NCBI RefSeq assembly: GCF_963921235.1
Contig: NC_086124.1
Location: 27,838,001-27,902,000 of the forward strand
Direction: 5' to 3'
DNA: 64,000 nt
Source: Mobula hypostoma
Taxonomy: Eukaryota
The notes beneath the pieces were generated by a model. The model saw only the letters and a program-made list of their open reading frames with translations. It did not search any database and was not told the DNA's origin. Made by a program: the position numbers and the translations under genes. The first letter of the stretch is position 1; each line of letters starts with the position of its first letter. Positions 11,161-64,000 of the stretch are shown here, piece after piece.

Positions 11161-11424
11161 AGTTCAGGGTCAGAACATTCTGGTAAACGCTCTCTGCAAT
11201 GAAAGGGACGAAGGCTTGGTATGGTTGACTTCAATGACAGCCCGGGGGTTGCCCAGGTCTCTGATGAAAGCTTCCAAAAGTGAAACGCTGGCCCCAAATT
11301 TCCTCACAGAGAAATCAACGTAAATGACATCTTTACCGTCGTAACCAAATCACAGGTCCGTTCTCGAGAACCACGGAGCTGTGCTGGAGTAGATTGTCCA
11401 GCTGATGTACATCCCAGATAAACA
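11161..11424 (-). pseudogene. Degenerate MHC beta1-domain exon (W-category WB-like), head-to-head with the alpha gene
   Basis: Minus strand: acceptor ctatccttctaattag|, donor T|GTAAGT, 264 nt, phase 1-1 at both ends. The middle reads DL*FGYDGKDVIYVDFSVRKFGASVSLLEAFIRDLG (YDGxD motif of class I alpha2 / WB beta1) in a different frame from the two ends, so two compensating frameshifts plus a TGA are needed. No frame is open across the exon. Confidence 0.7.
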
Positions 11425-24600: not shown

Positions 24601-27452
24601 TACCACTGGCAGTTAGTTTCTCTCCCAGGGCTCCATTAGGTGGCTGATGTGAACGTTGATTGTCAAAGTGGGTCCAATGGCAGATGATCAGCGAGAAACC
24701 ACTTCACCTGCCTGCAGCAAAATGTTTCGGGCTGCTTTATTTCTATGCAGTAATACTGAATTTCAAAAGTAATTTTTATATCATTGGCGTTGCTAACGGG
24801 AATTACATGGACTTGGTTCACTATCTTCCCAATATGGTTGTGTTGCCGGCAGTGAGTTGGCAATCTCAGAGAACAGTGGATCATTTACTCTTCTTGCTGC
24901 TGCTGTCAGGAAGAGATACAGGAGCCTCAGGACTGACACCACCATATTCAGGAATAGTTGTTGGCTATCAACCATCAGGTTCTTGAATCACTGGTAATAA
25001 TTTCACTTGCCCCATCACTGAAATGTTCCCACACCTATGGACTCACTTTCCAGGACTCTTCATCTCATGTTCTCGATATGTGTTGATTATTTATTTCTTG
25101 TTGTTATTTTTTACCTTTTGTATTTGCACAGTTTGCCGTGTTTTACAGACAGGTTGTTTGTCCACCCTGTTGGGTGTGGTCTTCCATTGATTCATTTATG
25201 GTTATTGGATTTACCAAGCATGCCCACAAGAAATCAAATTCCAGGGCTGTATATAGTGAAATATATGTGCTTTGCTAATAAATTTACTTTGAACTCCAGA
25301 AGTTTGCATCTATGACTGATACGAATTAATAGATAATAATCATCATCTAATGCAACTGACAAAAAAAAATCTTCAACTTATTCTTTTAGAAATCGGTGAG
25401 CTCTATCTGTACTTAGAGAAACCAGCTGTCTTCGGGGAGGTAAACACTTTGACCTGTTTCATCAGCGGCTTTTTCCCACCAACCGTAATGGTAACGTTAC
25501 AGAAGAACGCACAGCCTGTCAATGGCGAAGTTAACTCCTCACACCTCTCATTTGGCAAAGATTGGCGATTTCAAGTGCTCCACTACACATACATCCAGCC
25601 AGCAGAAGGTGACATATACTCCTGTAGAGTGCTCCATAACATCAGCAAAGAGGAAAAAGTAATTTACTGGGGTAAGAGAATGTTATGGTTGTTATTCTAT
25701 AGATTTATTGAGTATGTCCACAGGAAAACAATAGGTACTTTGATGCTAAAGTTACTTTTTGAACTTTGAAAATACTCTGGGGTAAGTGATACAGGGCAGC
25801 AGAGTAGCATGGCAGTTAGTGCCGTGGTTTACAACACCAAATGTAAGATCAAGGTTTGATTCCTACTGCGGACTGTGAGGAGTTTCTACGTTCTCTCCGT
25901 GACCGCATAGGTTTTGTCCAGGCACACTGCTTTCCTCCCATGTTTCAAAGATGTATGGGTTAAGGTTAATGAGTTGTGGGTTGCTATGTTGGCACCAGAA
26001 GTGTGGCAGCATTTGCGAGCTGCCCTCAGCACGATCCTCACTGTTATGATTGGGTGCATTTATCTGTATGTTTTGATCTTTCAACGTACACATGGCAAAT
26101 AAAGCTTATCTCTGAAATCCAGCTCATTGCCTGCAGTGCTGACTGACAGCATTTTCCAGTGGAAGTGTTGTTGAGATCAGGAGCTTAGCAAATACAAAGA
26201 CAAGCTTCCCTTTGCGCATTTCAGCTAGTGTTGTACCACTCCAACCCAATCTGGAGCCGAGCCATAGATTCACTAATGAGGGGTAGTGCTGAAGCACTCC
26301 AACTGGATGAGATTGTTTTTAACCCTCGTGTTGCTCTGTTAGGTCAGTGAGAGGAAAACCAGCTCATGTTCCTGTTTACACTCAGTATCCAGCAATTCCC
26401 AGTGGAACGTGAGGATGCAATGTGACTATTTCGGTTTTATCTTGATCAATCCTGCTGCCAATATTGATACAGCACAGAATAGACCCTTCCAGCTGCACCA
26501 CCCAGCAACTCCCAAGTTTAACACTAGCCTAATCACAGGACAATTTATAATGACCAATTAACCCATCAACTAATACGCCATTGAACTGTGGGAGGAAACC
26601 GGAGCACTTGGTGGAAACCCATGTGGTAATAAGGAGAACATACAAACGACTTGCATACAGCTGCAGGAATTGAACCCAGTCACTGGTACTGTATGGTGCT
26701 AACCTCTGCACTACAGTGTTTTCATTTACTGATAGCCATTTAGTCATATAGTCATGGAAAAGTACAGCACAGAAGTAGGACATTTGCCCCACCTAGTCCA
26801 TGCCAAACAATTTAAACTGCCTACTCCCCTCGACCATAGCCCTCCAAACCCCTACATCCATATACCTATCCAAACTTCTCTTAAACGTTGAAATCAAGCT
26901 TGCATGCACCACATCTGCTAACAGCTCATTCCACACTCTCACAATCATCTGAGCGAAGTAGTTTCCCCTCATCTTCCCCTTAAACTTTTCACCTTTCACC
27001 CTTCACCCATGACCTCTAGTTGCAGCGCCACTCAACCTCGGTGGAAAAAGCCTATCTATACCCCTCATGATTTTGTATCTAAAATCAGTCTAGGGCTGAT
27101 CCTAGGAAAACTTTGGACACCTGGAACCTTTGCAACACCTGCTTCACTATTGGAAAGTATATTCAGCTGAGAAAGGGAAACAGGGAAGAGGACAATTTAG
27201 TTTCGCCAGCTCATCTTTGTTCAAACTGATTTAAAAACTAGTTCCCCGTTCAAAATATGAGTGTGTGCTTTGTTCACAGAACCAGAAGAACAAAGTCGTG
27301 CTGAAGGACTGGATACAAGCCAGATTGCTGTTTTGATCTGTGGGCTGATTATAGGAATACTTGGCACAGCAGCTGGACTCTACTTATGTTTTCAGTTGCG
27401 ACTGTCTGGCTGTGACTCTTGGACAGTCCGGATCAATCCCCCTTCTCAATAA
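15480..27452 (+). CDS. WA: MHC W-category-type alpha chain gene; spliced CDS join(15480..15555,23506..23769,25390..25671,27280..27452), 795 nt, 264 aa
   Basis: Four exons, all phase-1 junctions with GT/AG sites, splice into one open frame: leader, alpha1, Ig-C1 alpha2, CP/TM/cytoplasmic. alpha2 carries B2M-type residues (VTLQKN with Leu at the usual Ig Trp, LSFGKDWRF, YSCRVLH, terminal YW). TM has the class II alpha GxxxGxxGxxxG motif. MHC class II-type alpha chain is near certain; the W-category label rests on the by-eye motif match. Confidence 0.85.
18350..18845 (-). mobile_element. L1-clade LINE 3' end
   Basis: Minus strand LEKIRS...KRWGSF-type ORF2 C-terminus followed by a long T-rich 3' UTR. 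Confidence 0.6.
19665..20745. repeat. Degenerate ~61-bp tandem array in intron 1, interrupted by a Penelope terminal-repeat fragment (about 20290-20440)
   Basis: Recurring gtgtgtcctacccttgtacaccgaggtccctct words at about 61-nt spacing (e.g. 19783/19843, 19961/20022). Confidence 0.75.
20868..23408 (+). mobile_element. 5'-truncated young CR1 LINE in intron 1 (endonuclease tail plus RT, one +1 frameshift)
   Basis: ORFs 20872-21963 and 22016-23302 are broken by one extra T in the homopolymer of VTPLFKKG (about 21956-21961); (tttctatg)n tail ends about 100 nt before exon 2. Confidence 0.95.
23506..23769 (+). CDS. WA: alpha-chain exon 2, alpha1 (peptide-binding-type) domain
   Basis: Acceptor tttttatcctttcag|, donor G|GTGAGT, 264 nt, phase 1-1. 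ETDTLEVTIFFTDDLSLPDGAAELKIQDRSIGYYDTT...LAEQLMDQAKLLTNNSLPPN: strand-then-helix pattern with a C-terminal NNS sequon where class II alpha1 has its N78 glycan. Confidence 0.85.
25390..25671 (+). CDS. WA: alpha-chain exon 3, Ig C1-set alpha2 domain, beta-2-microglobulin-like
   Basis: Acceptor ttcttttag|, donor G|GTAAGA, 282 nt. NTLTCFISGFFPP...YSCRVLH Cys pair; SHLSFGKDWRFQVLHYTYIQPAEGDIYSCRV resembles B2M [31 protein letters not shown]. Confidence 0.93.
25793..26110 (+). mobile_element. tRNA-derived SINE in intron 3 (related copy on - at about 26500-26710)
   Basis: A-box-like tagcatggcagttag and B-box-like ggtttgattcc, then body and A-rich end. Confidence 0.55.
27280..27452 (+). CDS. WA: alpha-chain exon 4, connecting peptide/TM/cytoplasmic tail with stop
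   Basis: Acceptor tgctttgttcacag|; EPEEQSRAEGLDTSQIAVLICGLIIGILGTAAGLYLCFQLRLSGCDSWTVRINPPSQ*; G-LII-G-IL-G-TAA-G matches the class II alpha TM glycine motif. Confidence 0.88.
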
Positions 27453-31800: not shown

Positions 31801-34609
31801 CTCGAACTCTATGCCCAAACACAAGTTCAAAAGGACTAAAACCTAATGATTCCTGCAAAAAGTAGTAAATGTATACCTTCATTCCAGTCCTTTTCATTTT
31901 CCACACAATATGTCCTAATCATAGTTTTTAGTGTAGAATGAAATCTCCCCAAGGCTTCTTGTGATTTGGGATGATAGGCTGAGGAAATAATCTGTTTTCC
32001 TCCCAGTTTACAAACTATCGGCTGAAACAACCCGGACATAAAATTACTACCTTGATCTGATTGTATTTCCTTAGGCAACCCAAAATAAGTAAAGAATTTT
32101 ATAAGAGCCTTTGTCACAGTTTTGGCTGTTATATTCCTAAGAGGTACTGCCTCTGGAAACCAAGATGCTGTGTACATAATAGTTAATAAATATTGATGTC
32201 CAGTTTTAGTTTTTGGCAAAGGATCTACACAGTCTACAATGATTTTTGAGAACGGCTCACTGAATACTGGAATAGGTTGCAGTGGGGCCACTGGAGTAAC
32301 CTGATTAGGTTTACCCACAATTTGACACATCTGACACGTTCTACAAAATGTCGCCACATCTTGTCTTAAACTAGGCCAATAAAAATGTTTAGAAACTTTG
32401 TTCATAGTTTTGTTTACACCTAAATGACCACCCAAAGGAATACTATGAGCTATAGTTAAAATCTCATTTTGGTAAATTTTAGGAATTATTACGTGATGAT
32501 TAACTTCCCATTCCTCACTAGCAGGAATTGTAGGCAATGTCCACTTTCTCATTTATACCCCCTTTTCAAAATAATATCCTCCTGGTACTTTTCCAATTTC
32601 ACTATCTGGAAGAGCTTGTTCTTTTAATTTAACTATCTCAGGATCTCTATCCTGCTCTGCTATCATCTCCTTCCGAGATAAAGACAAATCTTCCTGGTCA
32701 GACTTACCACCAAGATCCTGATCAAATGATGTAGGTAAGAAAGTTTCTGATACATCCACAAAATTCGAATCTTGATTTGAGCCGTCATGGCTAACAACCT
32801 CATCCTTTACATCAGTCTTTTTAGCCATAGCTCTTGTCACAACACAGGAAGAATCTGTGTTAGAATCCCTCTGTGGTTCCTCAGAATTTGAATTTATTGT
32901 CAAATGCATTTCAGGAAAAACTTGTCCACCTGCTAAATCATTCCCTAACAAAAAAGAAACATCATTCACAGGTAAACTGGATTGTAATCCTACTTTAACA
33001 ACCCTGTAACTAATCCCGATCTTAAATTTACTCTATGTAAATGTACTGGCATAAGGGCACTCCCTACTCCTCTTATATAATTTACCTCATCAGGGTCAGA
33101 CTCATCACTAAACCTTAGCACACCGTCTAATATTAGTGATTGAGAAGCTCCAGTATCTCTAAGTATTCTTATTGGTACTGAATTGGATCCTTCGTTCAAG
33201 GATACAAATCCTTCTGTTATAAAAGTTTCATATTCCTTCTTAACTTGGTCAGACTCTGACACATCTTCATTAGTATTTTCTGAACCCTGTGGCTTCACAG
33301 GTTTTTCCAATATGCTGCACACAAGCATCTGGGACCACTTCTTTCTCTTTCCTTTTCAATTGGAAGTAATCAGCCATGTTTCTTACAATAATTCATAATA
33401 ATAACAAAATGTCTTTCCTTCACATGTCTCCCTTCATCCTTACTTTTCTCACTAACTTCAGGTTTAATTTCTGGTTAACCTTGACTCTCTGTGCTATTTT
33501 TCCTTTTAAAAATTTTACCTGGAGAAAATTTATTCTTGTGAGTTAAAACATACTCATCAGCTAATTTAGCAATCTCCTGCAATGTAGCAGTGTCCCATTC
33601 ATTTAAATATGTCTCACTTCAACAGGAATGCTTCTTTTAAATTCCTCCTGCAAAATCAGCTCTTTTAATTTATTATACTCCCCATTCACAGTTTTAGAGG
33701 AAACCCATCTCTCAAAACACACAGATTTCTCATAGGCAAATTCCACATAAGTTTTTTCCACCAATTTCTTCAAACTCCTGAATCTTTCTCGATACGCCTT
33801 CAGAACCATCTCGTATGCCTTTAATATATGCTGCTTAACAATATCATAATCCAGTGCTTGCTCAGCATCTAAAGCCGTATAAACTTGTTGTGCCTTGCCT
33901 TTAGTTACACTTTGTAACATCACTGGCCATTGGTCTCTCGGCCACTTTAAACCCAGAGCAACAATTTCGAAATGCTGGAAATATTTGTCCACTTCAGCTT
34001 CATTAAATGGAGGAGCCAAAATAACCTCACGACTAGCAATAAACTGTTTCGTAGAACCAGAAGACTGATTACCGGACTTTAATTTCTGCATCTCTAGCTC
34101 AAATTTCCTGTGGTTTTCAGCCTCTCTTTCTTCGAATTCCCTTATTTTATTAGCCTCTCTTTTGGCCATTTCCGCTTTAAAATGTTCAAACATTAACTGT
34201 TCAAGATATAACTGCATTTCCAGATTACTCACTGGAAACTTATCTAACACCTCCTCATCAAATAATTTCAAATTAATATAATGCTCAGCAATTATTCTTT
34301 GTATGAAAGCCTTGGTGGAATTTTTCGTAATTCCTTTAATATCCAACTTCCTAGCAATCTCCAATACCTCAGGTTTTCTCGCATTCTCTAAAGACTCCAA
34401 GTTAGGCGTGTCCAAAAACCTGTCAATATCCATTGTTGCCGAATACTACTCACACCAATCAAACCAAAAAAAATTGGATATTTCCCTTTTCCAAATCAAA
34501 ATGGCAATTACCAGCACTTAAACTCAAATCTGGAACATCCCGGACGAGCCCCCACAGATTATGTTATGTAACCGGCAACAATGAATATCAATCAAGACAG
34601 GTTATATAA
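28838..34609 (-). mobile_element. Gmr1-like Gypsy LTR retrotransposon (gag-PR-IN-RT-RH order), decayed, 5' LTR truncated
   Basis: 3' LTR 28838-29722 (TGTTAC...GTAACA) with adjacent PPT; 48-bp 5' LTR remnant 34562-34609; PBS TGGGGGCTCGTCCGGGAT (tRNA-Pro) at 34537-34554; gag 33603-34433, protease LRDTGASQS, integrase 31436-32552, RT 30389-31426, RNase H 29916-30392. Confidence 0.93.
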
Positions 34610-38525: not shown

Positions 38526-39679
38526 AAGGTACACCTGCTCGTTCATACAAATATCTAATGAGCCAATCATGTCACAGCAACTCAATGCATAGGAGCATGC
38601 AGGCATGTTCAAGAGGTTCAGTTGTTCTTCAGAACAACTTCAGAATGGGGAAGAAATGTGATCCAAGTGACTTTGATGGTGGAATGAATGTTGGAGCTAG
38701 TTGGGATCATTCGAGTATCTCAGAAGCTGCTGAGAAAAGCTTTCCCCACCATTGAGCACATCTACACGAAGTGCTGTCGCAGGAAAGCAGCATCTATGAT
38801 TAGGGACTCCCACCACCCAGGACATGCTCTCTTCTCGCTGCTGCCATCATGAAGGTGGTACAGGAGACTCAGGATAACTTCACTTGCCCCATCATTGTAA
38901 ATGCTGACACAACCAATGGACTCATTTTCAAGATTTCTTCATCTCTTGATCTTGATATTTATTGCTTATTTATTATCATTTCTTCATTTTTGTATTTGCA
39001 GAGTTTGTCATCTTCTGCACAAGGTTCCCCTGAGTTGATGCGGTCATTCATTAATTCTTGTATGGTTATTTTATGCCTGCAAAGGAAAATATCCCAGAGT
39101 TGACATACGGCGTATATGTACTAAATTTACTTTGAAATTTGATCTCTGTTGGATTTTCATACACAACAGTTTACAGAGAATGGTGTGAAAAAGAAAAAAA
39201 ATCCAGTGAGTGTCAGTTCTGTGTCCGAGAACGCCTTGTCAGTCAGAGAGTTCAGAAGAGAATGACCATACTGTTTCAAGCTGACAGGAAGGTGACAGTA
39301 ATTTAAATAACCATACATTACAACAGTGGGGTGCAGAAGAGCATCTCTGAACACACAGCATGTCGAACCTTGAAGAGGATGGTCTACAGCAGCAGAAGAC
39401 CAGAAATATACAAGCGATATCTAATGAAGCGGCCGATGTGTGTATTTTAGTTTTCTGAACTTGAATCATCATGCTGCTGGATGACAAAGTGTGTTGTACA
39501 GATTTTATTTGAATCCACAGACATTCTTCATTCTTCCAAGCAGGTGCGGCAACAGAAAGATTTTGCTCAGAGGTTAATTGTACCTTAGGATGTAGGACTC
39601 CGCACCTCTTGATAACTGCTTTGCAGGCACTGACAACACTGGTCTCCAGCACTGCAGTTAAACATAGGCACACGAGATG

Positions 39680-40260: not shown

Positions 40261-41127
40261 TGCGGATGATCATGGTCATAGGCTCTTGGCAAATTCTACA
40301 GAAATAGTTTGCTATTGCTTTCTTCTGGGGAGTTGTTTTACAAAACGAGTGATTCCAGCCATTATCAATACTCTCCAGAGATTGTCTGCCAGGCTGTTGT
40401 CAATTGTCAATGGCCACAAAATCAGGATTTATGCCCCACGAATCTGACAGGGGGATAAGCAGGTGCTACACCTTACCCAGGGGTGACCTGCATGCCAGCA
40501 GAGGGAAGGAGCACCTTACACCTTTGGTCAACGTATGTGAATAGGAAATCAAACTGAAGTGAGCTAAACACAAGGTAAAAAGCTGCATTGTGAGGCAGGT
40601 GATTTCCAATGCATGCCAGACAAACGAGAACGGAGACGGCAGGCACCAGGTATCCAAGTACCAGCAAGTTGTGAATTTGACAGTTCGATTTCAAGCTTCT
40701 GTCGTGCATTCAGAGGCAGGCCTCGGCATCTGGCCAAGTTCTTCAGACAGACGGTCCTCCTCACCGTGTGAGCAGAGTTCTGAGAAGAAAAGAGAAGAGG
40801 GATGATGAAGATATGGACTGTGTAATAATTAAGTCAGCACCAGTCAACAGCAGTATGTAACATTTCAGGATATAATGCTGCTGCTTTATAATGGATTAGG
40901 CAATCCACATTTGGAGCATCGCGAGCAGTTTTGGACCTAAGCTAAGAATGGATGTACTGACAGTGGAGTGGTTCCAGAGGAGGTTCACGAGAATGATCCT
41001 GGAAATGAAAGGGGTAAAGTATGATGAGCATTTGACAGCTCTGGGTCTGTACTCACTGAAGTTTAGAACAATGGCGAGTGGGATGTCATTAAAACCTACT
41101 AAATATTGAAAGGCCTGGTTAGAATTG

Positions 41128-51131: not shown

Positions 51132-52524
51132 TTTGGAATGTGGGAGGAAACCCACACGATCAGGAGCAGACCATACACTATTCCTTACAGGCAGTAGTGG
51201 GATTGAACCCGGGTTGCTGGTTATGCCACTGTGCTACCCATTCTTAAGTCTGTGCGTGCGCGAGTGATTAACATACTAAAGCAACTGTGGGCTGCCCACA
51301 GGTGACTGAAATGAAAGGGGCAAGTGATTAATTCAAGGAAGGCCCTGTGCAGACTGCAACGCTTGTTAATGGCGATATGTATCTTGTGCTGAAGAAGGTA
51401 TTACCTGGGTGTGTAACAGAGGCACTTGCATTTGAACATATGAAGCCTTGAATCCAGTTCATCCCACGTTGAGAGCCACAACCATGGTGAGCTGGAGAGA
51501 AATAATCAATGCTATTATGGGTTTACTGAGTATGCCCACAAAAAATTGAATCTCAGCGTTGGTTATGGTGACATATACGGTATGTACTTTGATGATAAAT
51601 TCACTTTGAACTTTGATAAGCATTGTGAAGTCACTGAGGTGCCTGCAAGGGAACACTGCTGAGGGGCACAAGGCAGTACGGGAAAAGACTGCAATCTAAA
51701 GTCCGCTGGAATGGGACACTTTGAAAGCACTAAGACATGGCCCAGCAAGGTAGTGAAAGAGGGAAGTTCATCACAAACGGTAACTGTTGGCCTTACCATT
51801 GACACACAGATTCTCAAAAAATGAATTAAACACAACACTTGTGGTTAAATTAAAGGTGTTGATGAATTGGCAGATAGGAGCAAGATTAAAAATCTCGTTG
51901 ATTGCTGCCATACCAACAACCTCCCATTCAAATTCAGCAAAATCAAAAAACTGATTACTGACTACAGGAGGAGGAAATCAGAGGTCCATGAGCCTGTCCT
52001 CATTGGAGGATCAGTAGTGAAGAGGGTCAGTAACTTTTCAATTCCTTCACATTGCCTTATCAGAGGATCTGTGTTGGAACCAGCACATTGCGTTGTCACA
52101 AAGAAAGGACTGCAGCATCTCTAATTTCTTAGAAGTTTATACAGATTTGGTACGTCATCAAAAAATTTGACAAACCTCTATAGAAATGGAAAAGTCGACA
52201 GAAAGTGGTGGACACAGCCCAGTCCATCACAGGTAAAGCCCTCCCCACCACTGAGAACATTTATAAGGAGTACTGTTGTTGGCCATGAAGGAATTAAATT
52301 ATGGAATAAAACATTGAATTTGAATGGGTCAGGGACAGTGGAAGTAGATAAACCAATTGTCTGTTCTTGCCATGTGCTTGAAGGAATAGAGGTTACCATT
52401 TTGTGAAGCTCCTCTGTAACCTCCATTTTGTGAACTGTTTGATGAACTGATTCTTTCTGTGAGATAACTTAATCAGAGCAATTGAATGTGGACACAAGAA
52501 TTTTCTGCTATTGAACTGAGATCA

Positions 52525-53231: not shown

Positions 53232-56200
53232 CAGTGGCATGCAAAAGTTTTAGAACATATAGAACATAGAACATAGAATAGTACAGCACATTACAGGCCC
53301 TTCGGCCCACAATGTTGTGCCGATCCTCAAACCCCGCCTCCCATATAACCCCGCACCTTAAATTCCTCCTTATACCTGTCTAGTGGTTTTGGCACCCCTG
53401 GTCAAAATTTCTGTTACTGTGAATAGTTAAGTAAGTAGAAGATGAACTGATCTCCGAAAGTCATAAAGTTAAAAATGAAACATTATTTTCAATATTTTAA
53501 ACAAGATTAGTGTATTATTTTTGTTTTGTACAATTTTTGAGTGAAAAAAAGGAAAAGAGCAGCATGCAAACGTTTGGGCGCCCCAAGAGATGTGAGGTCT
53601 CAGATAACTTTTATCAAGGTTTCAGACCTTAATTAGCTTGTTAGGGCTATGGCTTGTTCACAGTCATCGTTAGGAAAGACCAGGTGATGCAAATTTCAAA
53701 GCTTTATGAATACCCTGACTCCTCAAACTTTGTCCCAACAAACAGCAGCCATGGGCTCCTCTAAGCAGCTGCCTAGCACTCTGAAAATTATAGTAATTGA
53801 TGTCCACAAAACAGGAGAAGGCTATAAGAAGATAGCAAAGCGTTTTCAGGTAGCCGTTTCCTCAGTTCGTAATATAATTAAAAAATGGCAGTTAACAGGA
53901 ATGGTGGTGTTCAAGTTGAGGTCTGGAAGACCAAGAAAACTTTCTGAGAGAACTGCTCGCAGGATTGCTAGAAAGGCAAATCAAAACATCTGTTTGACTG
54001 CAAAAGACCTTCAGGAAGATTTAGCAGACTCTGGAGTGGTGGTGCACTGTTCTACTGTGCAGCGACACCTGCACAAAAATTACCTGCATGAAAGAGTCAT
54101 CAGAAGAAAACCTTTCCTGCATCCTCACCACAAAATTCAGCAACAGAAGTTTGCCAAGGAACATTGAAACAAGCCTGATGCATTTTGGAAACAAGTCCTG
54201 TGGACTGATGAAGTTAAAATAGAATTTTTTGGCCGCAATGAGCAAAGGTATGTCTAGAGAAAAAAAGGTGCAGAATTTAATGAAAAGAACACCTCTCCAA
54301 CTGTTAAGCACGGGGGTGGATCGATCATGCTTTGGGCTTGTGTTACAGCCAGTGACACGGGGAACATTTCACTGGTAGAGGGAAGAATGTATTCAATTAA
54401 ATACCAGCAAATTCTGGAAGCAACCATCACACCATCTGTAAAAAAGCTGAAGACGAAAAGAGGATGACTTCTACAACAGGATAATGATCCTAAACACATC
54501 TCAGAATCCACAATGGACTACCTCAAGAGACGCAAGCTGAAGGTTTTGCCATGGCCCTCGCAGTCCCCCGACCTAAACATCATTGAGAATCTGTGGATAG
54601 ACCTCAAAGAGCAGTGCATGCAAGATGGCTCAAGAATCTCACAGAACTGGAAGCCTTTTGCAAGGAGGAATGGGTGAAAATCCCTCAAACAAGAATTGAA
54701 AGACTCTTAGCTGGCTACAGAAAGCATTTACAACCTGTGATACTTGCCAAAGGGGGTGTGACTAAATACTGACCAGGCAGGGTGCCCAAACTTTTGCTTT
54801 AGGTCCTTTTCCTTTTTTTGTTATTTTGAAACTGTTAAAGATGGAAATAAAAAAAGTAATCTTGCTTAAAATGTGAAAGAATTGTGTCATCTTTAACTTT
54901 ATGCCTTTTGGAAATCAAGTTGGAGAGGTGTTCTTCTCATGAAATTCTGCACCCTTTTTTCTCCAAACATACCTTTGCTCATTGTGGCCAAAAAGTTCTA
55001 TTTTAACTTCATTAGTTCACAGGACTTGTTTCCATAATGCATCAGGCTTGTTTCGATGTTCCTTTCCAAACTTCTAATGCTGAATTTTGTGGTGAGGATG
55101 CAGGAAAGGTTTTCTTCTGATGACTTCCATGAAGGTCATATTTGTGCAGGCGACGATGCACAGTACAACAGTGCACCACCACTCCAGAGTCTGCTAAATC
55201 TTCCTGAAGGTCTTTTGCAGTCAAACAGGGGTCTTGATTTGCCTTTCTAGCAATCCTACGAGCAGTTCTCTTAGAAAGTTTTCTTGGTCTTCCAGACCTC
55301 AGCTTAACTTCCACCATTTCTGTTTACTGCCATTTCTTAACTACATTACAAACTGAGGAAACGGCTACCTGAAAACGCTTTGCTATCTTTTTATAGCCGT
55401 CTCCTGCTTTGTGGACATCAATCATTTTAATTTTCACAGTGCTAGGCGGCTTCTTAGAGGAGCCCATGGCTGCTGATTGTTGGGACAAGATTCTTCTTCT
55501 TCTTCTATTTCCGGCTGTTTAGACGCATCTAGGCATATTACAGCCCTCTGCAGGATGTATAATTAATTATAGAACTTCAAGGAACTCAAATTCTCGAATA
55601 CAACCTAGTCTCATGAATAAACTGAATAATAGAGTCTTCAATCAGATGTTGATTCTCTTGATGGCCAAGCGAAGATTTAACAGAAAACCAAAATAAATTT
55701 AAGCCAGATAACCTCTTGAACAACATGCTTCTTTCAATTTTGTATCAATTACAGCTCAGCAAAATATACTGGACTGTCTCTGGACTACCACAATCACATA
55801 ATCCAGTAGGATGTTTTCCTATTATCTTTAAATAATAATTTAGCCCACAATGCCCCAACCTAAGTCTTGTTAATTTCACCATATCTCTACGACTTAAAAG
55901 GTAACAGTCTAAGTCCTTTTTAACTAGTGGGTGACTAGAAAAGTAATGCCTGCCCCTTAATTTGTTTTTCCAATCCTCCTGCCACTTCTTCTCTATACCT
56001 TTTTAAATCCCACTTCTCAATTCTGCTCTGCCTAGGGGAACTCTAATTTCTACTTGCCTGCTCTGTAAGGAAGACTTTGCAATGCCATCCACAATTTCAT
56101 TTCCCTCCACCCCAGCATGCCCAGGTATCCAAGAAAATCTAACTGCACAACCCATCTTCCCTACTCTAAACAGCACTAAGAGAATCTCAATAATTATCTC

Positions 56201-57394
56201 AGGATGAGCTTTTGATTTACTCCCTTTTATAGACTTGAAGGCAGCAGCAGAATCCGAACAGATGATAACCCTGCATGGTCGAGAGTCTTCTATCCACAAT
56301 AAGGCCCAGAGGATTGCTAATAATTTTGTAGCAAAGACAGAAACACCATCTGAAACCCGGTGACCAATCTTAACTCCAAGTTGAGACACATACATCTCAA
56401 ATCCTGCCCTACTGCTCTCTGGGTCCACTGAGCCATCAGTAAAAATCTTCAGATAAGATCCCCACTTATTATTTAAATATTCATTTGTGATCAACGCTGA
56501 TGAAATTGCACTGCTTCTTGAAGCTGAAAAGGGAGGATTATGTCTACTTCTGGTTCTGGAAAGAGCCAAAAAAGGATAGGTGGTAAGCAAACTTGGTCAA
56601 CTATGTCTTCCTCAGTCAGTTTCAATTTCACAGCCCAGTTAGTAACCAAATCTAAAAATGGTTATCTTTTACTTTTACTTTGGCGCTCTGACTTCCCCTG
56701 CAAAAGACACTTTGATGGACAGCAGTGATTGAATCCATTTAGTTTTACCCAATACTTCGGGCCCAACTGAATTTGTCTTAAATGCACAGGCAGTTCTCCC
56801 ATCTCCATACATAATGCTGGGACTGATGTTGTTCTAAAAGCTCCACAACAGAGTCTAAGTGCTTTGGACTGCACACCGTCTAGTTTTCGAAGCACTGCCA
56901 TAGCAGCGGGAACCATATGCAATACAACCATAATCTATAACTGATCTAATCATAGCTAGATACATTAAGTACATAGTTTCCCGCCCTGCTCTACAGTCGC
57001 ATCCAGCAATACTTCTCATAACATTTAAAACTTCCTCACACTTTTTGGAACAAGTTTGAGGAGTCAGGGTATTTATAAAACTTTGAAATTTGCATCACCT
57101 GGCCTTACCTAACGATGATTGTGAACAAGCTAATTAAGGTCTGAGACCTTGGTAAAAGTTATCTGAGAGCTCAAATCTCTTGGGGTGCCCAAACTTTTGC
57201 GTGGTGCTCCTTTCCTCTTTTTCACTCTAAAATTGTACAAAACAAAAATAATACGCTGATCTTGCTTAAAATGTTGAAAAGAATGTTTCATTTTTAACTT
57301 TATGACTTTTGGAGATTAGTTCATCTTCTACTCACTTAACTACTCACAGTAACAGAAATTTTGACCGGGGTGCCCAAACTTTTGCATGCCACTG
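53232..57394. mobile_element. Tc1 complex: a full + copy (transposase about 53748-54770) joined to an inverted partial copy, bounded by TA-flanked TIRs
   Basis: TA|CAGTGGCATGCAAAAGTTT at 53232 and AAACTTTTGCATGCCACTG|TA at 57394; [32 protein letters not shown] motifs; 54918 onward mirrors 54302 back to 53232. Confidence 0.88.
55490..57044 (-). mobile_element. Nimb/I-clade LINE 3' part with RNase H, inserted in the Tc1 arm
   Basis: ORF 56003-56590 KIFTDGS..CSDS..WIPGHAGVEGNEIVD; (AAG)n tail; near-TSD TTGGGACAAG / TTGGAACAAG. Confidence 0.8.
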
Positions 57395-57837: not shown

Positions 57838-57881
57838 TCAATCTAGAAAGGGGCATCTACCAAGTATATCGTATTTCCTGC
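57838..57881 (-). CDS. Candidate terminal cytoplasmic-tail exon of the convergent chain, (G)RKYDILGRCPFLD*
   Basis: Acceptor ttttattcattcaaattatag|, phase compatible with the 60720 donor, lies in non-repeat sequence, ATTAAA about 130 nt past the stop (57704-57709, minus). Confidence 0.4.
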
Positions 57882-58003
57882 CTATAATTTGAATGAATAA
57901 AAGTATGTTTTAGAAACAAAGAAAAGTACAGCTCAGAACCAGGCCATTCCGCCCACATTTGTACTAGCCACGATACCAAATTACACGATCTCCTTTTAGT
58001 CTT

Positions 58004-59250
58004 CACTCAGTGGCCACTTTATTAGGTATTTGCTTGTTAATGCAAATATCTAATCAGCCAATCATGTGGCAACTCAATGCATAAAAGCATGCAGACGTGG
58101 TCAAGAGGTTCAGTTGTTGTTCAGTCCAAACATCAGAATGGGGAAGAAATATGATCCAAGTAACTTTGACCACAGACCAGGCAGGGTGGTTTGAATAGCT
58201 TAGTAACTGCTGATCTCCTGGGATTTTCACGGGCAACAGTCCCTAGAGTTTATAGAGAACAAAAAAAACATCCATGGAGCAGTTCTGATGGGCTGAGTGG
58301 ACTAATTGTACTCCGATGTCTTACGTCCTATCTCTGAAGATTAAAATTCTTTAATCCACAGCTTTGGGACCTGAGTGGTGCTGACTACACAAAATGTCTC
58401 CTTCAGACTTAATGACTGGCCTTGGCCCAAAATGTCAACTGTTTATTCCCCCTCCATAGATGCTGCCTGACCGACCGAATTCTTGCAGCATTGTGTGCAT
58501 GTGTCTGTGTGCGTTGCTCTGGATTTCCACCAACTGCAGAATCTTTTGTGTTTCGAAACCGTCCCCTGGCCGTTTGCCACTGACCAAGAGAACGGTTCTT
58601 TCAGACACTCCCAAGTCATATGAGGCTTCCAAGAACAGTTGGTAACCTGAAGTTTCAGTGAAATGGAAATACTGACGGCCGAAATATCAAAAGTTACATT
58701 GTGAAGTTAATTAGCTACAGGTTAGTGCAGATCAGAAGCAGATTTAATATTAACAGAATTAATAGAAACATCTAATCAGCCAATCATGTGGCAGAAACTC
58801 AATGCATGCAGGCAGTCAAGAGGTACACTTGTTGTTCAGACCGAGCATCAGAGAGGGGAAGAAATGTGATTTAAGTGACTTTGACTGTGGAATGATTGTT
58901 GGTGCCAGATGGGGCGGTTTGATTATCACAGTAACTGCTGATCTCCTGGGATTTTCACATACAACAGTCTCTAGAGTTTACAGACAATGATGCGAGGAAC
59001 AAAAGTGGGGCGGCAGTTCTGAGGGTGAAAACAATTTGTTAATGGGTGGGGTCAGAGGAGAATGGCCAGACTGGTTCAAGCTGACAGGAAGGCGACACTG
59101 ACTCAAATAACTACACGTTATAACTGTGGTGTGCAGAAGAGCATCTCTGAACACACATGTCAAACTTTGAAATTGATGGGCTGCAGCAGCAGACCATGAA
59201 CATAAACGTTATTATGTTCCTCATGCACCCTTAATAAAGTGGCCACTGAG
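58004..59250. mobile_element. Two Tc1-derived MITE copies (family also at about 17580-17795, 19050-19200, 38530-38760, 39150-39450, 62740-62850, 63710-64000)
   Basis: TIR CACTCAGTGGCCACTTTATTAGG and its reverse complement; shared cagccaatcatgtggcagcaactcaatgc body. Confidence 0.75.
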
Positions 59251-60044
59251 GGTATAATGGCTCCACTTCTTGCTTGTTCACTCGTCTGCCAAAATGGTCT
59301 TAAACATTGCTTTCATATCTGGTTCCACCACCTCCCCTGGTACCCCAGGTCCTGACTGCTCTGTGTAGAACAGTTCTCCTCACAGCTCTCCGTTCACTTT
59401 TCCTCTCTCACCAGGAATCTGCACCATCGAACATTTGATAAACACAAGGGGTTCTGCAGATGCTGGAAAATCCAGAGCAACACACAAAATGCTGGATGAA
59501 CTCAGCAGGTGAGGCAGCAACGATAGAGGGGAATAAACAGTCAATGTTTCAGGTCAAGAACCTTCGTCAGGACTGGATTGGAAGGGGACAGAAGTAAGAG
59601 TAAAGCATGAGGAGGGAAAGGAATACATGCTGGCAGATGACGGTGAGTAGCATCGATTTCTCTAACTTCTGGTAATTTCTCTTCCCTTCCCATCTTATCT
59701 TTATCCATTCCCCATTCGGGCTACCCATTACCCCTTCACTTCTCCTTACTGTCCAGCGCCTCCCTATGGTGTCCCTCCACCTTCTGTTTCTCTCAAGGTC
59801 CACTCTCCTCTATCAGATTAGTTGAGTGTGGGGAGCTGATGGGAATGTCTCTAGTGTGTAGGTGTGGGGGTGGGGGGATTGGAGTTTAATTGGAGCTAAT
59901 GGAAATGTTGGAAGAACAAAGTTGGATAAACGTACATGGATATTTGATGGTCAGTGTGAACCAGGGGTCTGTTTCTGTCTTGAACTACTTCTTGTTCTCT
60001 GGCCTGCCCTTATGTTCTACCACTCTTTGTATAGATTTTGGTGT

Positions 60045-60579
60045 GAGGGGTCCCCAACCTTTTTAACACCGTGGACTGGTTTAATATTGACAATATTCTT
60101 GCGGACCAGCCGACAGGTGTTCAAGTAGGGTTGCCAACTTTCTCACTCCCAAATAAGGGACAGAAGTAGCAGTCAAATACAGGACACTTGTGTTTACCCC
60201 GAGAAAGACTACAACTACCATGAAGCCTTGCGCGGGCACCTGTGTGCACATGCGTGTACGTGCAGATTTCTTTTTCTACAAATCGGTTTTGGCTTAACCT
60301 TCCCGATTCTGTTAAGTGAAACTACACTGTACATACATTATTTCTAGTTTATACAGGCTGTGTATTTATCATATCATTCCTGCTTTTACTATGTATTGGT
60401 GTTATTTTAGGTTTTATGTGTTATTTGGTATGATTTGGTAGGTTATTTCAAGTTTAATAGTGCGTGACAGGGAATGAGGAAAGGTGCAGCTGACTCATAT
60501 CGTTTCATATCGCCAAATCATAGGGTTTCCTCGCGGCCCGGTAGCACATGCTTTGCGGCCCCGTGGTTGGGGACCACTG
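60045..60579. mobile_element. hAT-type MITE
   Basis: GAGGGGTCCCCAACC ... GGTTGGGGACCACTG termini; no TSD recognisable. Confidence 0.65.
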
Positions 60580-60719
60580 TTTAACCCATGCTGAATCACT
60601 GGGTCTCAGATGACCAGACTGGGTATTTGGCCAACTGAGTATCTGTGGCTTTTTTTTAATGAAGTGTATGAAGAAAAAGTGTTCCCCGGACTGATGAGTA
60701 CATACAAAAATATTCCTAC

Positions 60720-60821
60720 CTTTCCACCTGATCATTCCTCCGGACACTGCAATCAGTATGCCAATTATTCCAGCAATTATTCCAATCACATATCCATAGA
60801 CTGGATAGGTATTCTTGGGAA
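60720..60821 (-). CDS. CP/TM exon of a second MHC class II-type chain (probably beta/WB), convergent with the alpha gene; upstream exons outside the window
   Basis: Acceptor gttttactgattttcctag|, donor G|GTAGGA, 102 nt, phase 1-1. xPKNTYPVYGYVIGIIAGIIGILIAVSGGMIRWK-G: Gly-spaced TM helix ending ...K G| like class II beta TM exons, with no stop in the exon. Confidence 0.65.
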
Positions 60822-60949
60822 CTAGGAAAATCAGTAAAACTGGGGTCAGAAGATATTACAGCAGAGAGCAGTTTGGCCGCAGTTGTTCGCACTTCATCGT
60901 CTTCACCAGACTTCTCTAGTCTTGGTCCAATACAACAGCAGAGAATGGC

Positions 60950-62560
60950 CCCTTATTGAAGAAGGATGTGCTGGGTTTGAACCCAGGTCACTGGCAGTTA
61001 AAGTGTTATGTTACCTGCCAGTTAGACTGCTGGAATGTGCCGGTTGTCTTATGAGAAAGGGTCAGACAGGCTGGGCTTGTATCCACTGAGGATAGAAGTG
61101 TGCTAATTGGCTTATTATGATACACCGAGGTAAAAAAGTATTTGTGAGCATGATATCCAAACCATCATTCCATATATACAAGGTAGTACAAAAGCAAGTA
61201 CTTGGGAGAACTCGTGGAGGGTTCCCTAAATGTTAATTTGTCAGTTGAATCAATGGTAAGGGAGGCAAATACAATGTCAGCATTCTTTTCCTATGGACTC
61301 GAATATGAAAGCAGGAATCTATTGCCGGGCCTCATTAGGCATCGGTCAAATCCGCACTTGTAGTATTACGAGCAGTTTCATCTGGGAATGGATGTGCTTG
61401 CATTGGCGAGGGTCCAGAGGAGGTTCACGGTAAATTATCCTGGGAATGAATGGGTTAACATGCAGGGAACATTTCACAGGTGAAGGGCAAGTAGCGTCAA
61501 GGAAGCAGGGTGTCTGTAGAAGGACTTAGATTGGGAGAATTGGCAAAGAAGTAGCAGATGGAACACAGTGTCGGGAAGTGTATTTGGCAGAAGGAATAAA
61601 GGTGTAGACTATTTTTCTGAATGGGAGGAAATTCAGAACTCTGAGGGGCAAAGGGACTTGGGAGTACTTATGCAGGACTTCCTAAATGTTAATTTGCAGT
61701 TTGAGTTGGTACTGAGGAAGGCAAATGCAATGTGAGCATTTGTTTTGAGAGGACTAGAACATTAAAACAAGGACATGATACTGAGACCTCACTTTAAGTA
61801 TTATGAGCAGTTTTGGGCCTCTTATCTCAGAAAGGATGTACCGGAATTAGAGAGGGCCCAGAGGAGGTTCATGAGAATGATCCCAGGAAGGAAAGTACGA
61901 ACCAAGAGAAAACACAAATCCGAGGTGCAAAGGGAATTGGAGGTCCTCGAACAGGATTCCCTAAAGGTTAATTTGCAGGTGGAGTCAGGAGTAAGGAAGG
62001 CAAGTGCAGTGTTACCAATCTTTTATGCTGAGGCTTCATAAGAGATTGGTCTGATGTAGTTTGAGTACCGGAGAGGGTCTGAATGAGATTAACCAGAATG
62101 ATCCTGACAATGCACGGGTTAACATATGATGAGAATTTGATGGCTCTGGGCCGGTACTTGGTGGAGTTTAGACGAATGATGGGGGTGGGGGGGGTGGGGG
62201 TGTAAATCTCATTCAATCCTATCAAATACTGAAAAGCCTAGACAGAGTGGACGTGGAGAGGATGTTTCCTCTCGTGGGGGAGTCGAGCACCAGAGGACAC
62301 AGCCTCAGAATAGGAGGACATCCCTTTAGAACAGAGATGAGAAGGAACTTCTTTAGGTAAGTCCCTGAATTCATTGCCACAGACTGCTCTGGAGGCCACG
62401 TCACTGGGTAGATTTAAAGATGAAGTTGAAAGCTTCTTCATCATTAAGGGTGTCAAAGGTTACGGGGAGAAGGCAGAAATACGGGGTTGAGTGGATAATA
62501 AATTAGCCATGAAATGCCAAAGCAGACTCAATAGGCCAAATGGACAAATTCTGCTCCTAT
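60950..62560 (+). mobile_element. Stack of old CR1 3' fragments
   Basis: Repeated RPHFKYYEQFW / LERAQRRFMRMIPG-type remnants. Confidence 0.7.
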
Positions 62561-64000
62561 AATTTACGACCTTGTGGTGATCAGCATGGTCCAGTTGGGC
62601 TGAAGAGCCCATATCTGTATTACTCCATGACTGATGTAGAAAGGGGAGTTACTGGTCCTCACCAGATTACAGCAGGATTCTGTTCCTGCGAAACAATCAT
62701 AACCTGAATGGGTTGAAAATGTGAACCAAATCACCCAATCATGTGGCAGCAACTCAATGCATCAAAGCATGCAGACAAGGCCAAGAGGTCCAGTTGTTGT
62801 TCAGACCAAACATCAGATTGGGGAAGAAATGTGATCCAAGTGACTTTCACCATGGAATCTAGTGAAGTTGGCGCCTGTGTACAACGTCCCCCTGGTCGAC
62901 ATCTACCAGATAGTCCATGAAACTGTTTATTTCACTTCTTTTACTTCTGCTTTTCATCTTAAATGTGTTTCTAGAACTGTTAAGAGCCTGTGATTTAGAG
63001 TTTGGAGATCAATTGGGTGACCTAGTGCTTTGCTGTCTCCAGGAAGATTCCAGGAAGCTCAAACAGCCTCAGGGCGAAGCAGCTTAAAGATAAGGTAGGG
63101 GCCAATGATCGAGTCCCTTTTGCCGAGTAAAGTGTCGAGGAAGATTGAATCTGAGGCAACTGCTTGCCTTTTGATTGCAGGGATGGATTTCTCTGCTGTC
63201 AGAGGAGTCTGTGTAGTGCCTTTCACTCACTGTTGTTGGAGGGTAGGCCTCTGTGTTTGAGTGGTCTCTCTCTCTCTCTCTCGCTGTTGGTCAGAGGACA
63301 TCACCAAGGTTCTGAATTTATGGATTGGACTATGGACTTCCAGTCTTATGATTTTTATATTCTATGTTTTCCCCTGTTCTTTCACCTTGTTATTGCATAG
63401 CATGTTTTGTTAGTTTTTTGTGTGGGGGAGGGGGTTTAGGGCTTGATGTTTTTGTTAGTTTTTTACGTGACGGAGTGGGGTTTAGATGGGTTGATGTTCT
63501 TGTAGCATTTTGATTTTTTTGTGCAGGGTGGGGGTTTGATGCTCCTGTTCAGTTTTGTTTTTTTTTGTGCCGGGGGGGGGGGGGGTTTGATGTTTATCTT
63601 TGAATGACTTCCACGGATTTCTTTTTTTCATGGCTATCTGGAGAAATGAATCTCAGAGTTGATACTGAATACATAGTTTGATAATAAGTGAACCTTTGAA
63701 CGATGCTGATGCACGACAGGGTGGTTTGAGTATCTCAGAAATTGTTGAGTTCCCGGGATTTTCAGGCACAAGTCTTAAGTTTAAAGTGAACAGTGTGAAA
63801 AACAAACCAAAAAAATTATCTACTGAGTGGCAGTTGTGGGCAAAAATGCCTTGTTAGTGTGATTTCAGAGGAGAATGGCCAGACTGGTTCCAGCTAACAG
63901 GAACACAATAGTAACTCAAAGAACCGCCTGTTACAATTGTAGTGTGCAGAAGAGCGTCAGTGAACGCAAACATTTCGAACCTTGAAGTGGATGGGCTACA

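What the first reader, a model, noticed from the sequence alone, without database searches (positions are those of the whole stretch)
57838..60821. 3' end of a second class II-type chain converging on the alpha gene
Seen: a 102-nt phase 1-1 exon encodes YGYVIGIIAGIIGILIAVSGGMIRWK-G. Its Gly spacing fits both alpha and beta motifs at 3 of 4 positions. Ending at K-G| with a separate tail exon is the class II beta layout. Inference: a second beta (WB-like) gene about 30 kb downstream, tail-to-tail with WA.
Basis: partly seen in the sequence, partly recalled or inferred. Interest (0 to 1): 0.7.

Follow-up and report, generated by a model that had tools for sequence, protein, structure and literature searches.

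The report
Membrane-anchor exon of devil-ray WB gene

Summary
A 102-nt phase 1-1 exon on the minus strand (60821-60720), with clean splice sites, encodes PKNTYPVYGYVIGIIAGIIGILIAVSGGMIRWK.

An exhaustive phmmer search found it 100% identical to residues 230-262 of Mobula hypostoma RefSeq XP_062891132.1, named "class II ... beta chain-like". That protein has a leader, an MHC_II_beta domain, a C1-set domain, then this TM segment.

The protein carries W-category beta (WB) marks:
- P57 and G61 in beta2 (ILPNQDGTFQ), where class II has W61.
- The glycine pattern of published shark WB_DS1 TM regions.
- Best PDB sequence hits to class I MR1, then class II beta.

So the reading "a second WB-like beta gene, tail-to-tail with WA" is right. 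The proposed tail exon (57881-57838) is not supported.

Splicing the TM exon to 40779-40691 reproduces isoform X4 exactly. Adding an 87-nt cassette exon (51491-51405) reproduces isoform X2.

The CDS spans 34,680 nt, from the stop at 40691 to about 75370. That end matches the WB gene this scan had already noted just beyond the window (s1-141866).

The WB stop lies 13 kb from the WA stop, not 30 kb. Transcription in Mobula was not shown here. The family is known and the gene model is public, so interest is low.

The parts
60720..60821 (-). Connecting-peptide / transmembrane exon of the WB_DS1-like beta-chain gene. It is 102 nt, phase 1-1, and encodes (V)PKNTYPVYGYVIGIIAGIIGILIAVSGGMIRWK.
   Evidence: Sequence and splice sites. 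It is 100% identical to residues 230-262 of XP_062891132.1. It is conserved in all batoid homologues. It shows the WB_DS1 glycine pattern.
51405..51491 (-). Alternative 87-nt cytoplasmic cassette exon, phase 1-1, encoding AHHGCGSQRGMNWIQGFICSNASASVTHP. It is included in isoform X2 (320 aa).
   Evidence: tblastn gave 100% identity. Splice sites are tctctccag| and CCAG|gtaatacc. The spliced translation equals the P0005 C-terminus. It is homologous to the shark WB_DS1 segment FPACGS.../LHACGS....
40691..40779 (-). Last coding exon: cytoplasmic tail (E)LCSHGEEDRLSEELGQMPRPASECTTEA plus the TGA stop at 40693-40691.
   Evidence: tblastn gave 100% identity. The acceptor is ttcttctcag|. TM plus tail translates exactly to the P0001 C-terminus. 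The tail is conserved across batoids. The CDS span of 34,680 nt ends here.
39504..39509 (-). First canonical AATAAA after the stop codon. This is a possible polyadenylation signal, giving a 3' UTR of about 1.2 kb.
   Evidence: Read directly from the sequence. It is an inference only, with no transcript evidence.
57838..57881 (-). It is not supported.
   Evidence: It is absent from every WB protein retrieved. Its acceptor aaattatag| has a weak pyrimidine tract.
58977..59018 (-). Repeat-derived potential terminal exon (E)LPPHFCSSHHCL*. Its peptide is identical to the annotated tail of the paralogue P0011. It is not used in the four isoforms of this gene.
27280..27452 (+). CP/TM/CY exon of the neighbouring WA (WA_DS10-like) alpha gene. 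Its TM reads ICGLIIGILGTAAG, the alpha-type GxxxGxxGxxxG motif. It is the presumed pairing partner and lies tail-to-tail with the WB gene.
   Evidence: Compared with the little skate DS10-like row of Dataset S3.

Best explanation
The exon is the connecting-peptide/transmembrane exon of an intact W-category MHC beta-chain gene of the WB_DS1-like lineage in the lesser devil ray (Mobula hypostoma). RefSeq annotates this gene as 'class II histocompatibility antigen beta chain-like' (isoforms XP_062891130.1 and XP_062891132.1).

The gene runs on the minus strand. Its leader, beta1 and beta2 exons lie just right of the window, at about 64.2-75.4 kb. Three exons lie inside the window:
- the CP/TM exon, 60821-60720;
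- an optional 87-nt cytoplasmic cassette exon, 51491-51405;
- the tail exon, 40779-40691.

Introns of about 9 and 11 kb separate these three exons.

The exon supplies a short stalk (PKNTYPV), a 23-24 residue glycine-rich helix and a basic stop-transfer RWK, which together anchor the beta chain in the membrane.

Inferred, by analogy with class II: the small-xxx-small glycine face packs against the GxxxGxxGxxxG helix of a WA alpha chain, such as the WA_DS10-like gene 13 kb away, to form the heterodimer. The acidic tail, which ends in a conserved S/T-x-V/A, handles sorting or scaffolding.
For: Shown:
- phmmer of the 33-aa exon against 1.84e9 proteins gave 4 hits. The best was 100% identical to residues 230-262 of P0001, E 1.2e-11. 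P0001 is XP_062891132.1 of M. hypostoma.
- P0001 has MHC_II_beta (24.3 bits, cut-off 20.9) and C1-set (59.4 bits) domains upstream of this segment.
- Splicing 60821-60720 to 40779-40691, with or without 51491-51405, reproduces the C-termini of isoforms X4 and X2 exactly.
- The CDS span is 34,680 nt. Counting from the stop at 40691 gives 75370, which is exactly the end of the WB gene noted earlier just beyond the window.
- No beta1 or beta2 match lies on the minus strand to the right of the TM exon inside the window.
- WB marks: beta2 reads ILPNQDGTFQ, giving P57 and G61, against the definitions in PMC8713811.
- The TM glycines G17, G21, G25, G28, G35 and G36 are identical in position to houndshark WB_DS1, THGYVAGIVIGVAGIIIALAGG.
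- By-eye identity of beta2 to houndshark WB_DS1 is about 48%.
- The best PDB sequence hits are class I MR1 alpha2-alpha3 (E 9e-25), then class II beta (E 5e-20).
- The first 44 beta2 residues of Amblyraja P0017 are identical to the paper's 'little skate WB DS1 like 01' row. P0001 matches P0017 at E 4.5e-77.
- In 18 batoid sequences the TM segment always ends ...WK, followed by a D/E-initiated tail or a cassette.
- A 1,011-nt Logan contig (L001, run SRR11241647) carries an uninterrupted 282-aa homologue, closest to skates. Its TM is joined directly to the homologous tail, so it reads as a spliced transcript.
- The M. birostris orthologue has a similar 36.9-kb span.
Against: - No Mobula transcript was seen. 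The XP_ records are automated gene models from the same assembly, so the 100% identity does not independently prove that the exon is expressed or spliced as modelled. A search for short protein fragments of the 3' part found nothing.
- DNA to the right of the window could not be fetched. The positions of the beta1 and beta2 exons therefore rest on span arithmetic plus an earlier unchecked note.
- The beta1 domain has V in place of the class I-like D37 and lacks the canonical cysteines, so ligand binding is uncertain.
- The gene is tail-to-tail with WA, not head-to-head as in published WA/WB pairs.
- TM pairing with WA is an analogy and was not tested.
Confidence: 0.93

Rival explanations
1. 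One reading: the same WB-like TM exon, but the transcript ends in a short tail exon at 57881-57838 (GRKYDILGRCPFLD*), making a compact 3' end 30 kb from WA.
For: An AG acceptor and an open frame with the right phase exist at 57881, and the translation reads through to a stop.
Against: No isoform of this gene, no paralogue and no orthologue in seven other batoid species carries this peptide. All of them continue with a D/E-initiated acidic tail or a cassette. The exact RefSeq C-termini are reproduced only with the exons at 51.4 and 40.7 kb. The acceptor has a poor pyrimidine tract.
Confidence: 0.03
2. The three 3' exons in this window are shared 'constant' exons used by two WB 5' units. One unit is proximal, at 64-75 kb. 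The other lies about 252 kb upstream. This is what RefSeq isoforms X1/X3 versus X2/X4 imply.
For: P0008/P0025 (X3/X1) differ from P0001/P0005 in beta1 and beta2 (88% identity overall) but have identical TM, cassette and tail. Their accessions are consecutive, as isoforms of one gene. The X1 CDS spans 279,198 nt and ends at the same coordinate.
Against: The span crosses three other genes, including a same-strand WB gene with its own TM and tail. In M. birostris the orthologous distal-type gene is compact (18,426 nt) and has its own, different TM and tail. The two beta2 exon ends are identical at the protein level (HLSVPDKLHAVW; the DNA there could not be fetched), so junction reads or protein alignments would probably map ambiguously. 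A gene-model chimera is the simpler reading.
Confidence: 0.06
3. The exon belongs to a recently inactivated or unexpressed gene copy: intact-looking 3' exons of a WB pseudogene.
For: The locus holds dead W-category relics, such as the beta1 relic at 11161-11424 with in-frame stops. The beta1 domain of P0001 lacks D37 and the canonical cysteines. No Mobula transcript was retrieved.
Against: All coding exons are open and in phase with canonical splice sites. The full 291/320-aa frame is intact in the RefSeq model. The M. birostris orthologue keeps the same structure, and its cassette peptide is 100% identical. The TM and tail are conserved across batoids.
Confidence: 0.08

Closest known systems
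Shark WB_DS1 (banded houndshark and great white shark W-category beta chain; Okamura et al. 2021, PMC8713811)
   Same: - The two-domain beta architecture is the same.
- Beta2 carries the ILPN.DGTF motif (P57, G61).
- The TM glycine positions are identical (GYVxGIxxGxxGIxIAxxGG), followed by a basic R-W/R-K/R.
- The cytoplasmic region is in homologous segments: (LH/FP/HH)xCGS..., then ...GE.E.L..E...P.P.
   Different: - In Mobula the middle cytoplasmic segment is an optional cassette exon.
- The Mobula introns are very long (9-11 kb).
- The tail ends in S/T-E-A/V, not ...AQD or ...IPN.
- Beta1 has lost D37 and the cysteines.
- The gene lies tail-to-tail with a WA_DS10-like gene, not head-to-head.
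Classical MHC class II beta genes (e.g. HLA-DRB1): exon 4 encodes CP/TM, later exons encode the cytoplasmic tail
   Same: - A phase-1 CP/TM exon is followed by separate short cytoplasmic exons.
- The conserved TM glycines G21, G28 and G35 are present.
- A partner alpha chain with GxxxGxxGxxxG is present.
   Different: - Beta2 has G, not the invariant W61, and it has P57.
- The sequence scores better against class I MR1 than against class II beta.
- It lacks G24 of the class II beta GxxxG pair and carries G25 and G36 instead.
Mobula birostris orthologue (XP_072102492-494; 'class II beta chain-like')
   Same: - The exon set is the same, including a 100% identical cassette peptide.
- The TM is 94% identical.
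- The gene span is similar: 36.9 kb against 34.7 kb.
   Different: - There are two TM substitutions (I->T, S->F) and three tail substitutions.
- The annotated isoforms start inside or skip beta1.

Membership tests
W-category MHC beta chain (WB), WB_DS1-like lineage | Class II-type beta architecture: signal peptide, membrane-distal beta1, Ig-like C1-set beta2, CP/TM/CY. | tested here: met
   P0001 has MHC_II_beta at 67-118 (24.3 bits, above the 20.9 cut-off), C1-set at 142-218 (59.4 bits), then the TM encoded by the window exon.
W-category MHC beta chain (WB), WB_DS1-like lineage | Beta2 lacks the class II-invariant W61 and mostly carries G61, as in class I alpha3. | tested here: met
   P0001 reads ...ILPNQDGTFQ..., with G where class II beta has the W of NGDWTFQ. 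The definition is in PMC8713811 section 8. The placement against class II rests on the unambiguous D-x-TFQ motif (established knowledge).
W-category MHC beta chain (WB), WB_DS1-like lineage | P57 in beta2 (the class I alpha3 / beta2-m contact residue). | tested here: met
   The P lies four residues before G61 in ILPNQDG. Houndshark WB_DS1 has the same arrangement, ILPNTDG.
W-category MHC beta chain (WB), WB_DS1-like lineage | Class I alpha2-like A32, G35 and D37 in the first half of beta1. | tested here: inconclusive
   P0001 reads FAYNGEV. A32 and G35 are present, and D37 is replaced by V. Batoid paralogues vary at this position.
W-category MHC beta chain (WB), WB_DS1-like lineage | Beta-type TM glycines, with the WB_DS1-specific pattern of Dataset S3. 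| tested here: met
   The window exon has G17, G21, G25, G28, G35 and G36, identical in position to houndshark and blue shark WB_DS1. By-eye identity over the CP/TM columns is 46-54%.
W-category MHC beta chain (WB), WB_DS1-like lineage | Sequence closeness to published WB_DS1 members. | tested here: met
   Beta2 is about 48% identical by eye to houndshark WB_DS1. P0001 matches Amblyraja P0017 at E 4.5e-77, and the start of P0017's beta2 is identical to the paper's little skate WB_DS1-like row. No formal tree was built.
W-category MHC beta chain (WB), WB_DS1-like lineage | Genomic pairing with a WA gene, typically head-to-head (WA_DS10L with WB_DS1L in great white shark). | tested here: not met
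   The gene is linked to a WA_DS10-like gene but tail-to-tail, with the stop codons 13.2 kb apart. The head-to-head position of that WA gene holds only a dead beta1 relic. Orientation is typical of the family and is not definitional.
Classical or conventional MHC class II beta chain | Invariant W61 in beta2. | tested here: not met
   The residue at that position is G. The public annotation name 'class II beta chain-like' is therefore imprecise.
MHC class I heavy chain | Three extracellular domains (alpha1, alpha2, alpha3) on one chain. | tested here: not met
   There are only two extracellular domains in 291 aa. The PDB matches cover class I alpha2-alpha3 only.

The most novel reading that the evidence does not exclude
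The TM, cassette and tail exons in this window may serve as shared constant exons for two WB 'variable' 5' units 250 kb apart, as RefSeq isoforms X1-X4 imply. That would be a protocadherin- or UGT1A-like variable/constant arrangement inside an MHC family. A smaller alternative is that the batoid-specific, conserved C-terminal S/T-x-V/A is a working PDZ ligand, which would tie W-category molecules to a scaffold.
Probability: 0.06. Interest if true: 0.65.

Novelty: new member of a known kind. Interest (0 to 1): 0.2.

Why it matters
It completes the gene model of one devil-ray W-category beta gene. The 5' part noted in the neighbouring window gets its membrane anchor and cytoplasmic tail, and these turn out to be spread over 20 kb of this window.

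It also shows that the nearest intact beta gene to the intact WA gene lies tail-to-tail with it, while WA's head-to-head partner is dead. That bears on which chains pair.

Beyond that it is routine. The W-category was described in 2021 and this gene is already in RefSeq under a class II-like name.

The practical lesson is that a short, plausible-looking tail exon near a TM exon can be a chance match when introns are this long.

Tried and rejected
1. It is absent from all homologues, and the exact isoform C-termini are reproduced only by the exons at 51.4 and 40.7 kb.
2. I looked for Ig or beta1 exons at 60822-64000 on the minus strand. None were found, only repeats.
3. I tried to fetch the DNA to the right of the window through the look-up of encoding contigs. 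The gene spans came back, but no DNA did because the file was too large.
4. I searched for short protein fragments of the TM, cassette and tail region as a proxy for Mobula transcripts. No hits.
5. I ran a bacterial promoter/terminator scan of the 3' UTR region. It is irrelevant for a vertebrate gene and was ignored.
6. I searched the Okamura paper's supplements for 'PDZ', 'cytoplasmic', 'alternative splicing', 'splice variant', 'tail-to-tail' and exon-number phrases. Only one 'head-to-head' passage turned up.
7. I considered a chance ORF in a repeat, or the TM exon of another IgSF protein. Both were rejected on the 100% match to a two-domain MHC protein and on the exon being unique in the window.
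8. No formal phylogeny against shark WB and classical class II beta was built, because those sequences are available only as paper text and long sequences may not be typed in.
Full report
**1. The observation**

On the minus strand the sequence reads ...gttttactgattttcctag|TTCCCAAG...GGTGGAAAG|gtaggaatat.
- The exon is 60821-60720, 102 nt, phase 1-1.
- Its 33 complete codons give PKNTYPVYGYVIGIIAGIIGILIAVSGGMIRWK.
- It occurs once in the window and is not part of a repeat.
- The 3.2 kb upstream of it, up to the window end, holds no Ig-like or groove-domain exon, only interspersed repeats.
- The only C1-set exon in the window belongs to the plus-strand alpha gene, at about 25.4-25.7 kb.

**2. 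What the exon belongs to**

I ran an exhaustive phmmer search of the 33 residues against 1.84 billion representative proteins. It returned four hits and nothing else.
- P0001: 100% identity over residues 230-262, E 1.2e-11.
- Three other batoid proteins: 94%, 72% and 67% identity.

P0001 is XP_062891132.1, 'rano class II histocompatibility antigen, A beta chain-like isoform X4' of Mobula hypostoma. A 320-aa isoform X2 (P0005, XP_062891130.1) sits in the same cluster.

Pfam finds an MHC_II_beta domain (residues 67-118) and a C1-set domain (142-218) in front of the matched segment. The exon is therefore the CP/TM exon of a two-domain, class II-type beta chain.

**3. The real 3' end**

After ...RWK comes ELCSHGEEDRLSEELGQMPRPASECTTEA.
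- tblastn places this tail, 100% identical, at 40786-40694 on the minus strand.
- The extra 29 residues of isoform X2 (AHHGCGSQRGMNWIQGFICSNASASVTHP) map 100% identical at 51492-51406.
- Reading the DNA gives a cassette exon at 51491-51405 (87 nt, phase 1-1, tctctccag| ... CCAG|gtaatacc).
- It also gives a last coding exon at 40779-40691 (ttcttctcag|AACTCTGC...GCTTGA).
- Joining TM and tail, or TM, cassette and tail, reproduces the C-termini of X4 and X2 residue for residue.
That peptide occurs in no isoform, paralogue or orthologue.
- The split codon after Lys is G|AA (Glu) or G|CT (Ala), not Gly.
- The first AATAAA after the stop is at 39509-39504. It is a possible poly(A) signal, unverified.

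**4. Where the 5' exons are**
- The CDS of P0005 spans 34,680 nt on a 37.5-Mb contig of GCA_963921235.1.
- Counted from the stop at 40691, this puts the start codon at window coordinate 75370.
The far ends coincide exactly.
- A second note (s1-143019) places its 258-nt groove exon at 73827-74084. That fits a minus-strand gene and the 86-residue beta1 of P0001.
- Those notes are unchecked leads and I could not fetch the DNA. The exact arithmetic agreement still makes it very likely that the window's exons are the missing 3' end of that gene.
- On this reading the beta2->TM intron is about 3.3 kb, TM->cassette is 9.2 kb and cassette->tail is 10.6 kb.
- The M. birostris orthologue has a similar 36.9-kb span.

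**5. Is it W-category?**

Okamura et al. 2021 (PMC8713811) define WB by class II architecture plus class I-type interface residues: no W61 (mostly G61) and P57 in beta2, and A32/G35/D37 in beta1.
- P0001 has ILPNQDGTFQ (P57, G61) and FAYNGEV (A32 and G35, but V for D37).
- In the paper's CP/TM alignment (Dataset S3) houndshark WB_DS1 reads THGYVAGIVIGVAGIIIALAGGIGRRRG-FPACGS.
- Great white shark reads TYGYVTGIVFMIFGI-IALAGGISRWRG-LHACGS.
- The window exon plus cassette reads VYGYVIGIIAGIIGILIAVSGGMIRWK-AHHGCGS.
- All six glycine positions (columns 17, 21, 25, 28, 35, 36) coincide. The start of the cassette exon matches the shark (LH/FP)ACGS segment.
- Full shark sequences in the SI show the same ILPNTDGTF motif, and beta2 is about 48% identical by eye.
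- The beta2 start of Amblyraja P0017 is identical to the paper's 'little skate WB DS1 like 01' row. P0001 matches P0017 at E 4.5e-77.
- Against PDB sequences, P0001 scores best with class I MR1 alpha2-alpha3 (E 9e-25) and next with class II beta (E 5.5e-20). This is the dual character expected of WB.

I therefore file it as a WB_DS1-like member, with two reservations: D37 is missing and no formal tree was built.

**6. Conservation and transcript evidence**

An alignment of 18 batoid sequences covers Mobula (two species), Hemitrygon, Hypanus, Pristis, Rhinoraja, Amblyraja, Leucoraja and a Logan contig.
- The TM segment VYGY[VA][IV]G[IV][IM].G[IL][IV]GIL... is conserved and always ends ...WK.
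- A D/E-initiated acidic tail or a cassette follows it.

The Logan contig L001 (1,011 nt, run SRR11241647; its protein is closest to skate proteins, and the run's species was not looked up) carries the whole 282-aa frame without interruption, with the TM joined directly to the homologous tail. This is consistent with transcript-level evidence, in a relative, for the TM->tail splice. Across the 27 helix codons, Mobula and this contig differ at 6 synonymous and 6 conservative codons.

For Mobula itself I found no transcript. The XP_ models are automated, and a search for short fragments of the 3' part was blank. Expression of this exon in the devil ray therefore remains inferred.

**7. How it most likely works**

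*Shown.* The exon encodes a 7-residue stalk, a hydrophobic helix of about 23 residues rich in glycine at i/i+4 spacing, and a basic RWK.

*Inferred.* It anchors the beta chain. As in class II, where TM GxxxG motifs drive alpha/beta pairing (PMC13399432), its glycine face packs against the alpha-type helix of a WA chain.
- The WA gene in this window (WA_DS10-like) has ICGLIIGILGTAAG, which is GxxxGxxGxxxG.
- In great white shark, WA_DS10L and WB_DS1L form a head-to-head pair.
- Here the head-to-head position of WA holds only a dead beta1 relic. The tail-to-tail gene is therefore the nearest intact candidate partner.
- The cassette exon would lengthen the cytoplasmic region by 29 residues without changing the frame.

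**8. Side observations**

*A 279-kb gene model.* RefSeq isoforms X1/X3 (P0025/P0008) attach a different leader-beta1-beta2 unit to the very same three exons. Their CDS spans 279,198 nt and crosses three other genes.
- In M. birostris the corresponding gene is compact (18.4 kb) and has its own TM and tail.
- The two beta2 ends are identical at the protein level. I read the join as a probable gene-model chimera (about 6% that it is real).

*C-termini.* All batoid tails end in S/T-x-V/A/L (TTEA, TTEV, ASEA, MSEV, VSEV, TLTL). This is the class I PDZ-ligand consensus (established knowledge). Shark WB_DS1 tails do not end this way.

*A repeat-derived exon.* A possible terminal exon at 59018-58977 encodes exactly the tail annotated for the paralogue P0011.

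**9. Verdict**

The exon is real and correctly interpreted as the anchor of a second, WB-like beta gene converging on WA. The tail exon and the spacing were wrong.

This scan had already found the gene's 5' part on the adjacent DNA, and RefSeq already models the whole gene under a class II-like name. It is a further member of a family described in 2021. The result is useful for completing the gene model and is of low interest otherwise.

Noticed in passing
window 40691-60821 (-), plus a distal unit about 252 kb beyond the window end: RefSeq isoforms X1/X3 (XP_062891129/131) join a second leader-beta1-beta2 unit to the same TM, cassette and tail exons. The resulting CDS spans 279 kb and crosses three other genes. 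The M. birostris counterpart is a compact gene with its own 3' exons, so this is probably a gene-model chimera.
   Followed up: partly
window 40694-40705 (-), the last residues of the tail exon: The tail ends ...TTEA. All batoid WB_DS1-like tails end in S/T-x-V/A/L, the class I PDZ-ligand consensus. Shark WB_DS1 tails end ...AQD or ...IPN. This may be a batoid-specific scaffold-binding motif.
   Followed up: partly
window 58977-59018 (-): Inside a transposon-like repeat, a potential terminal exon with an AG acceptor in the right phase encodes (E)LPPHFCSSHHCL*. This peptide is identical to the annotated tail of the paralogue XP_062890833.1 (P0011), whose tail therefore looks repeat-derived.
   Followed up: partly
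window 11161-11424 (-): A WB beta1-like exon with a GYDGKD motif has an in-frame stop inside the exon; two further stops lie in the same frame just upstream. It lies head-to-head with the WA gene. This scan had already noted it as a dead relic (s1-142174).
   Followed up: partly
window 20872-23302 (+); 30392-32552 (-); 56006-56590 (-); 2828-3781 (+): Retroelement ORFs by Pfam:
- A LINE endonuclease plus RT sits inside the WA intron.
- An LTR-type RT plus integrase lies between the WA and WB 3' ends.
- An RNase H fragment sits in the WB TM->cassette intron.
- An RT fragment lies near the window start.
   Followed up: partly
window 27280-27452 (+): The WA CP/TM/CY exon closely matches the little skate WA_DS10-like row of Okamura Dataset S3 (EPE..LD.SQ..VLICG.IIGILG.A.G). 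This places the window's alpha gene in the WA_DS10 lineage, which pairs with WB_DS1L in great white shark.
   Followed up: partly
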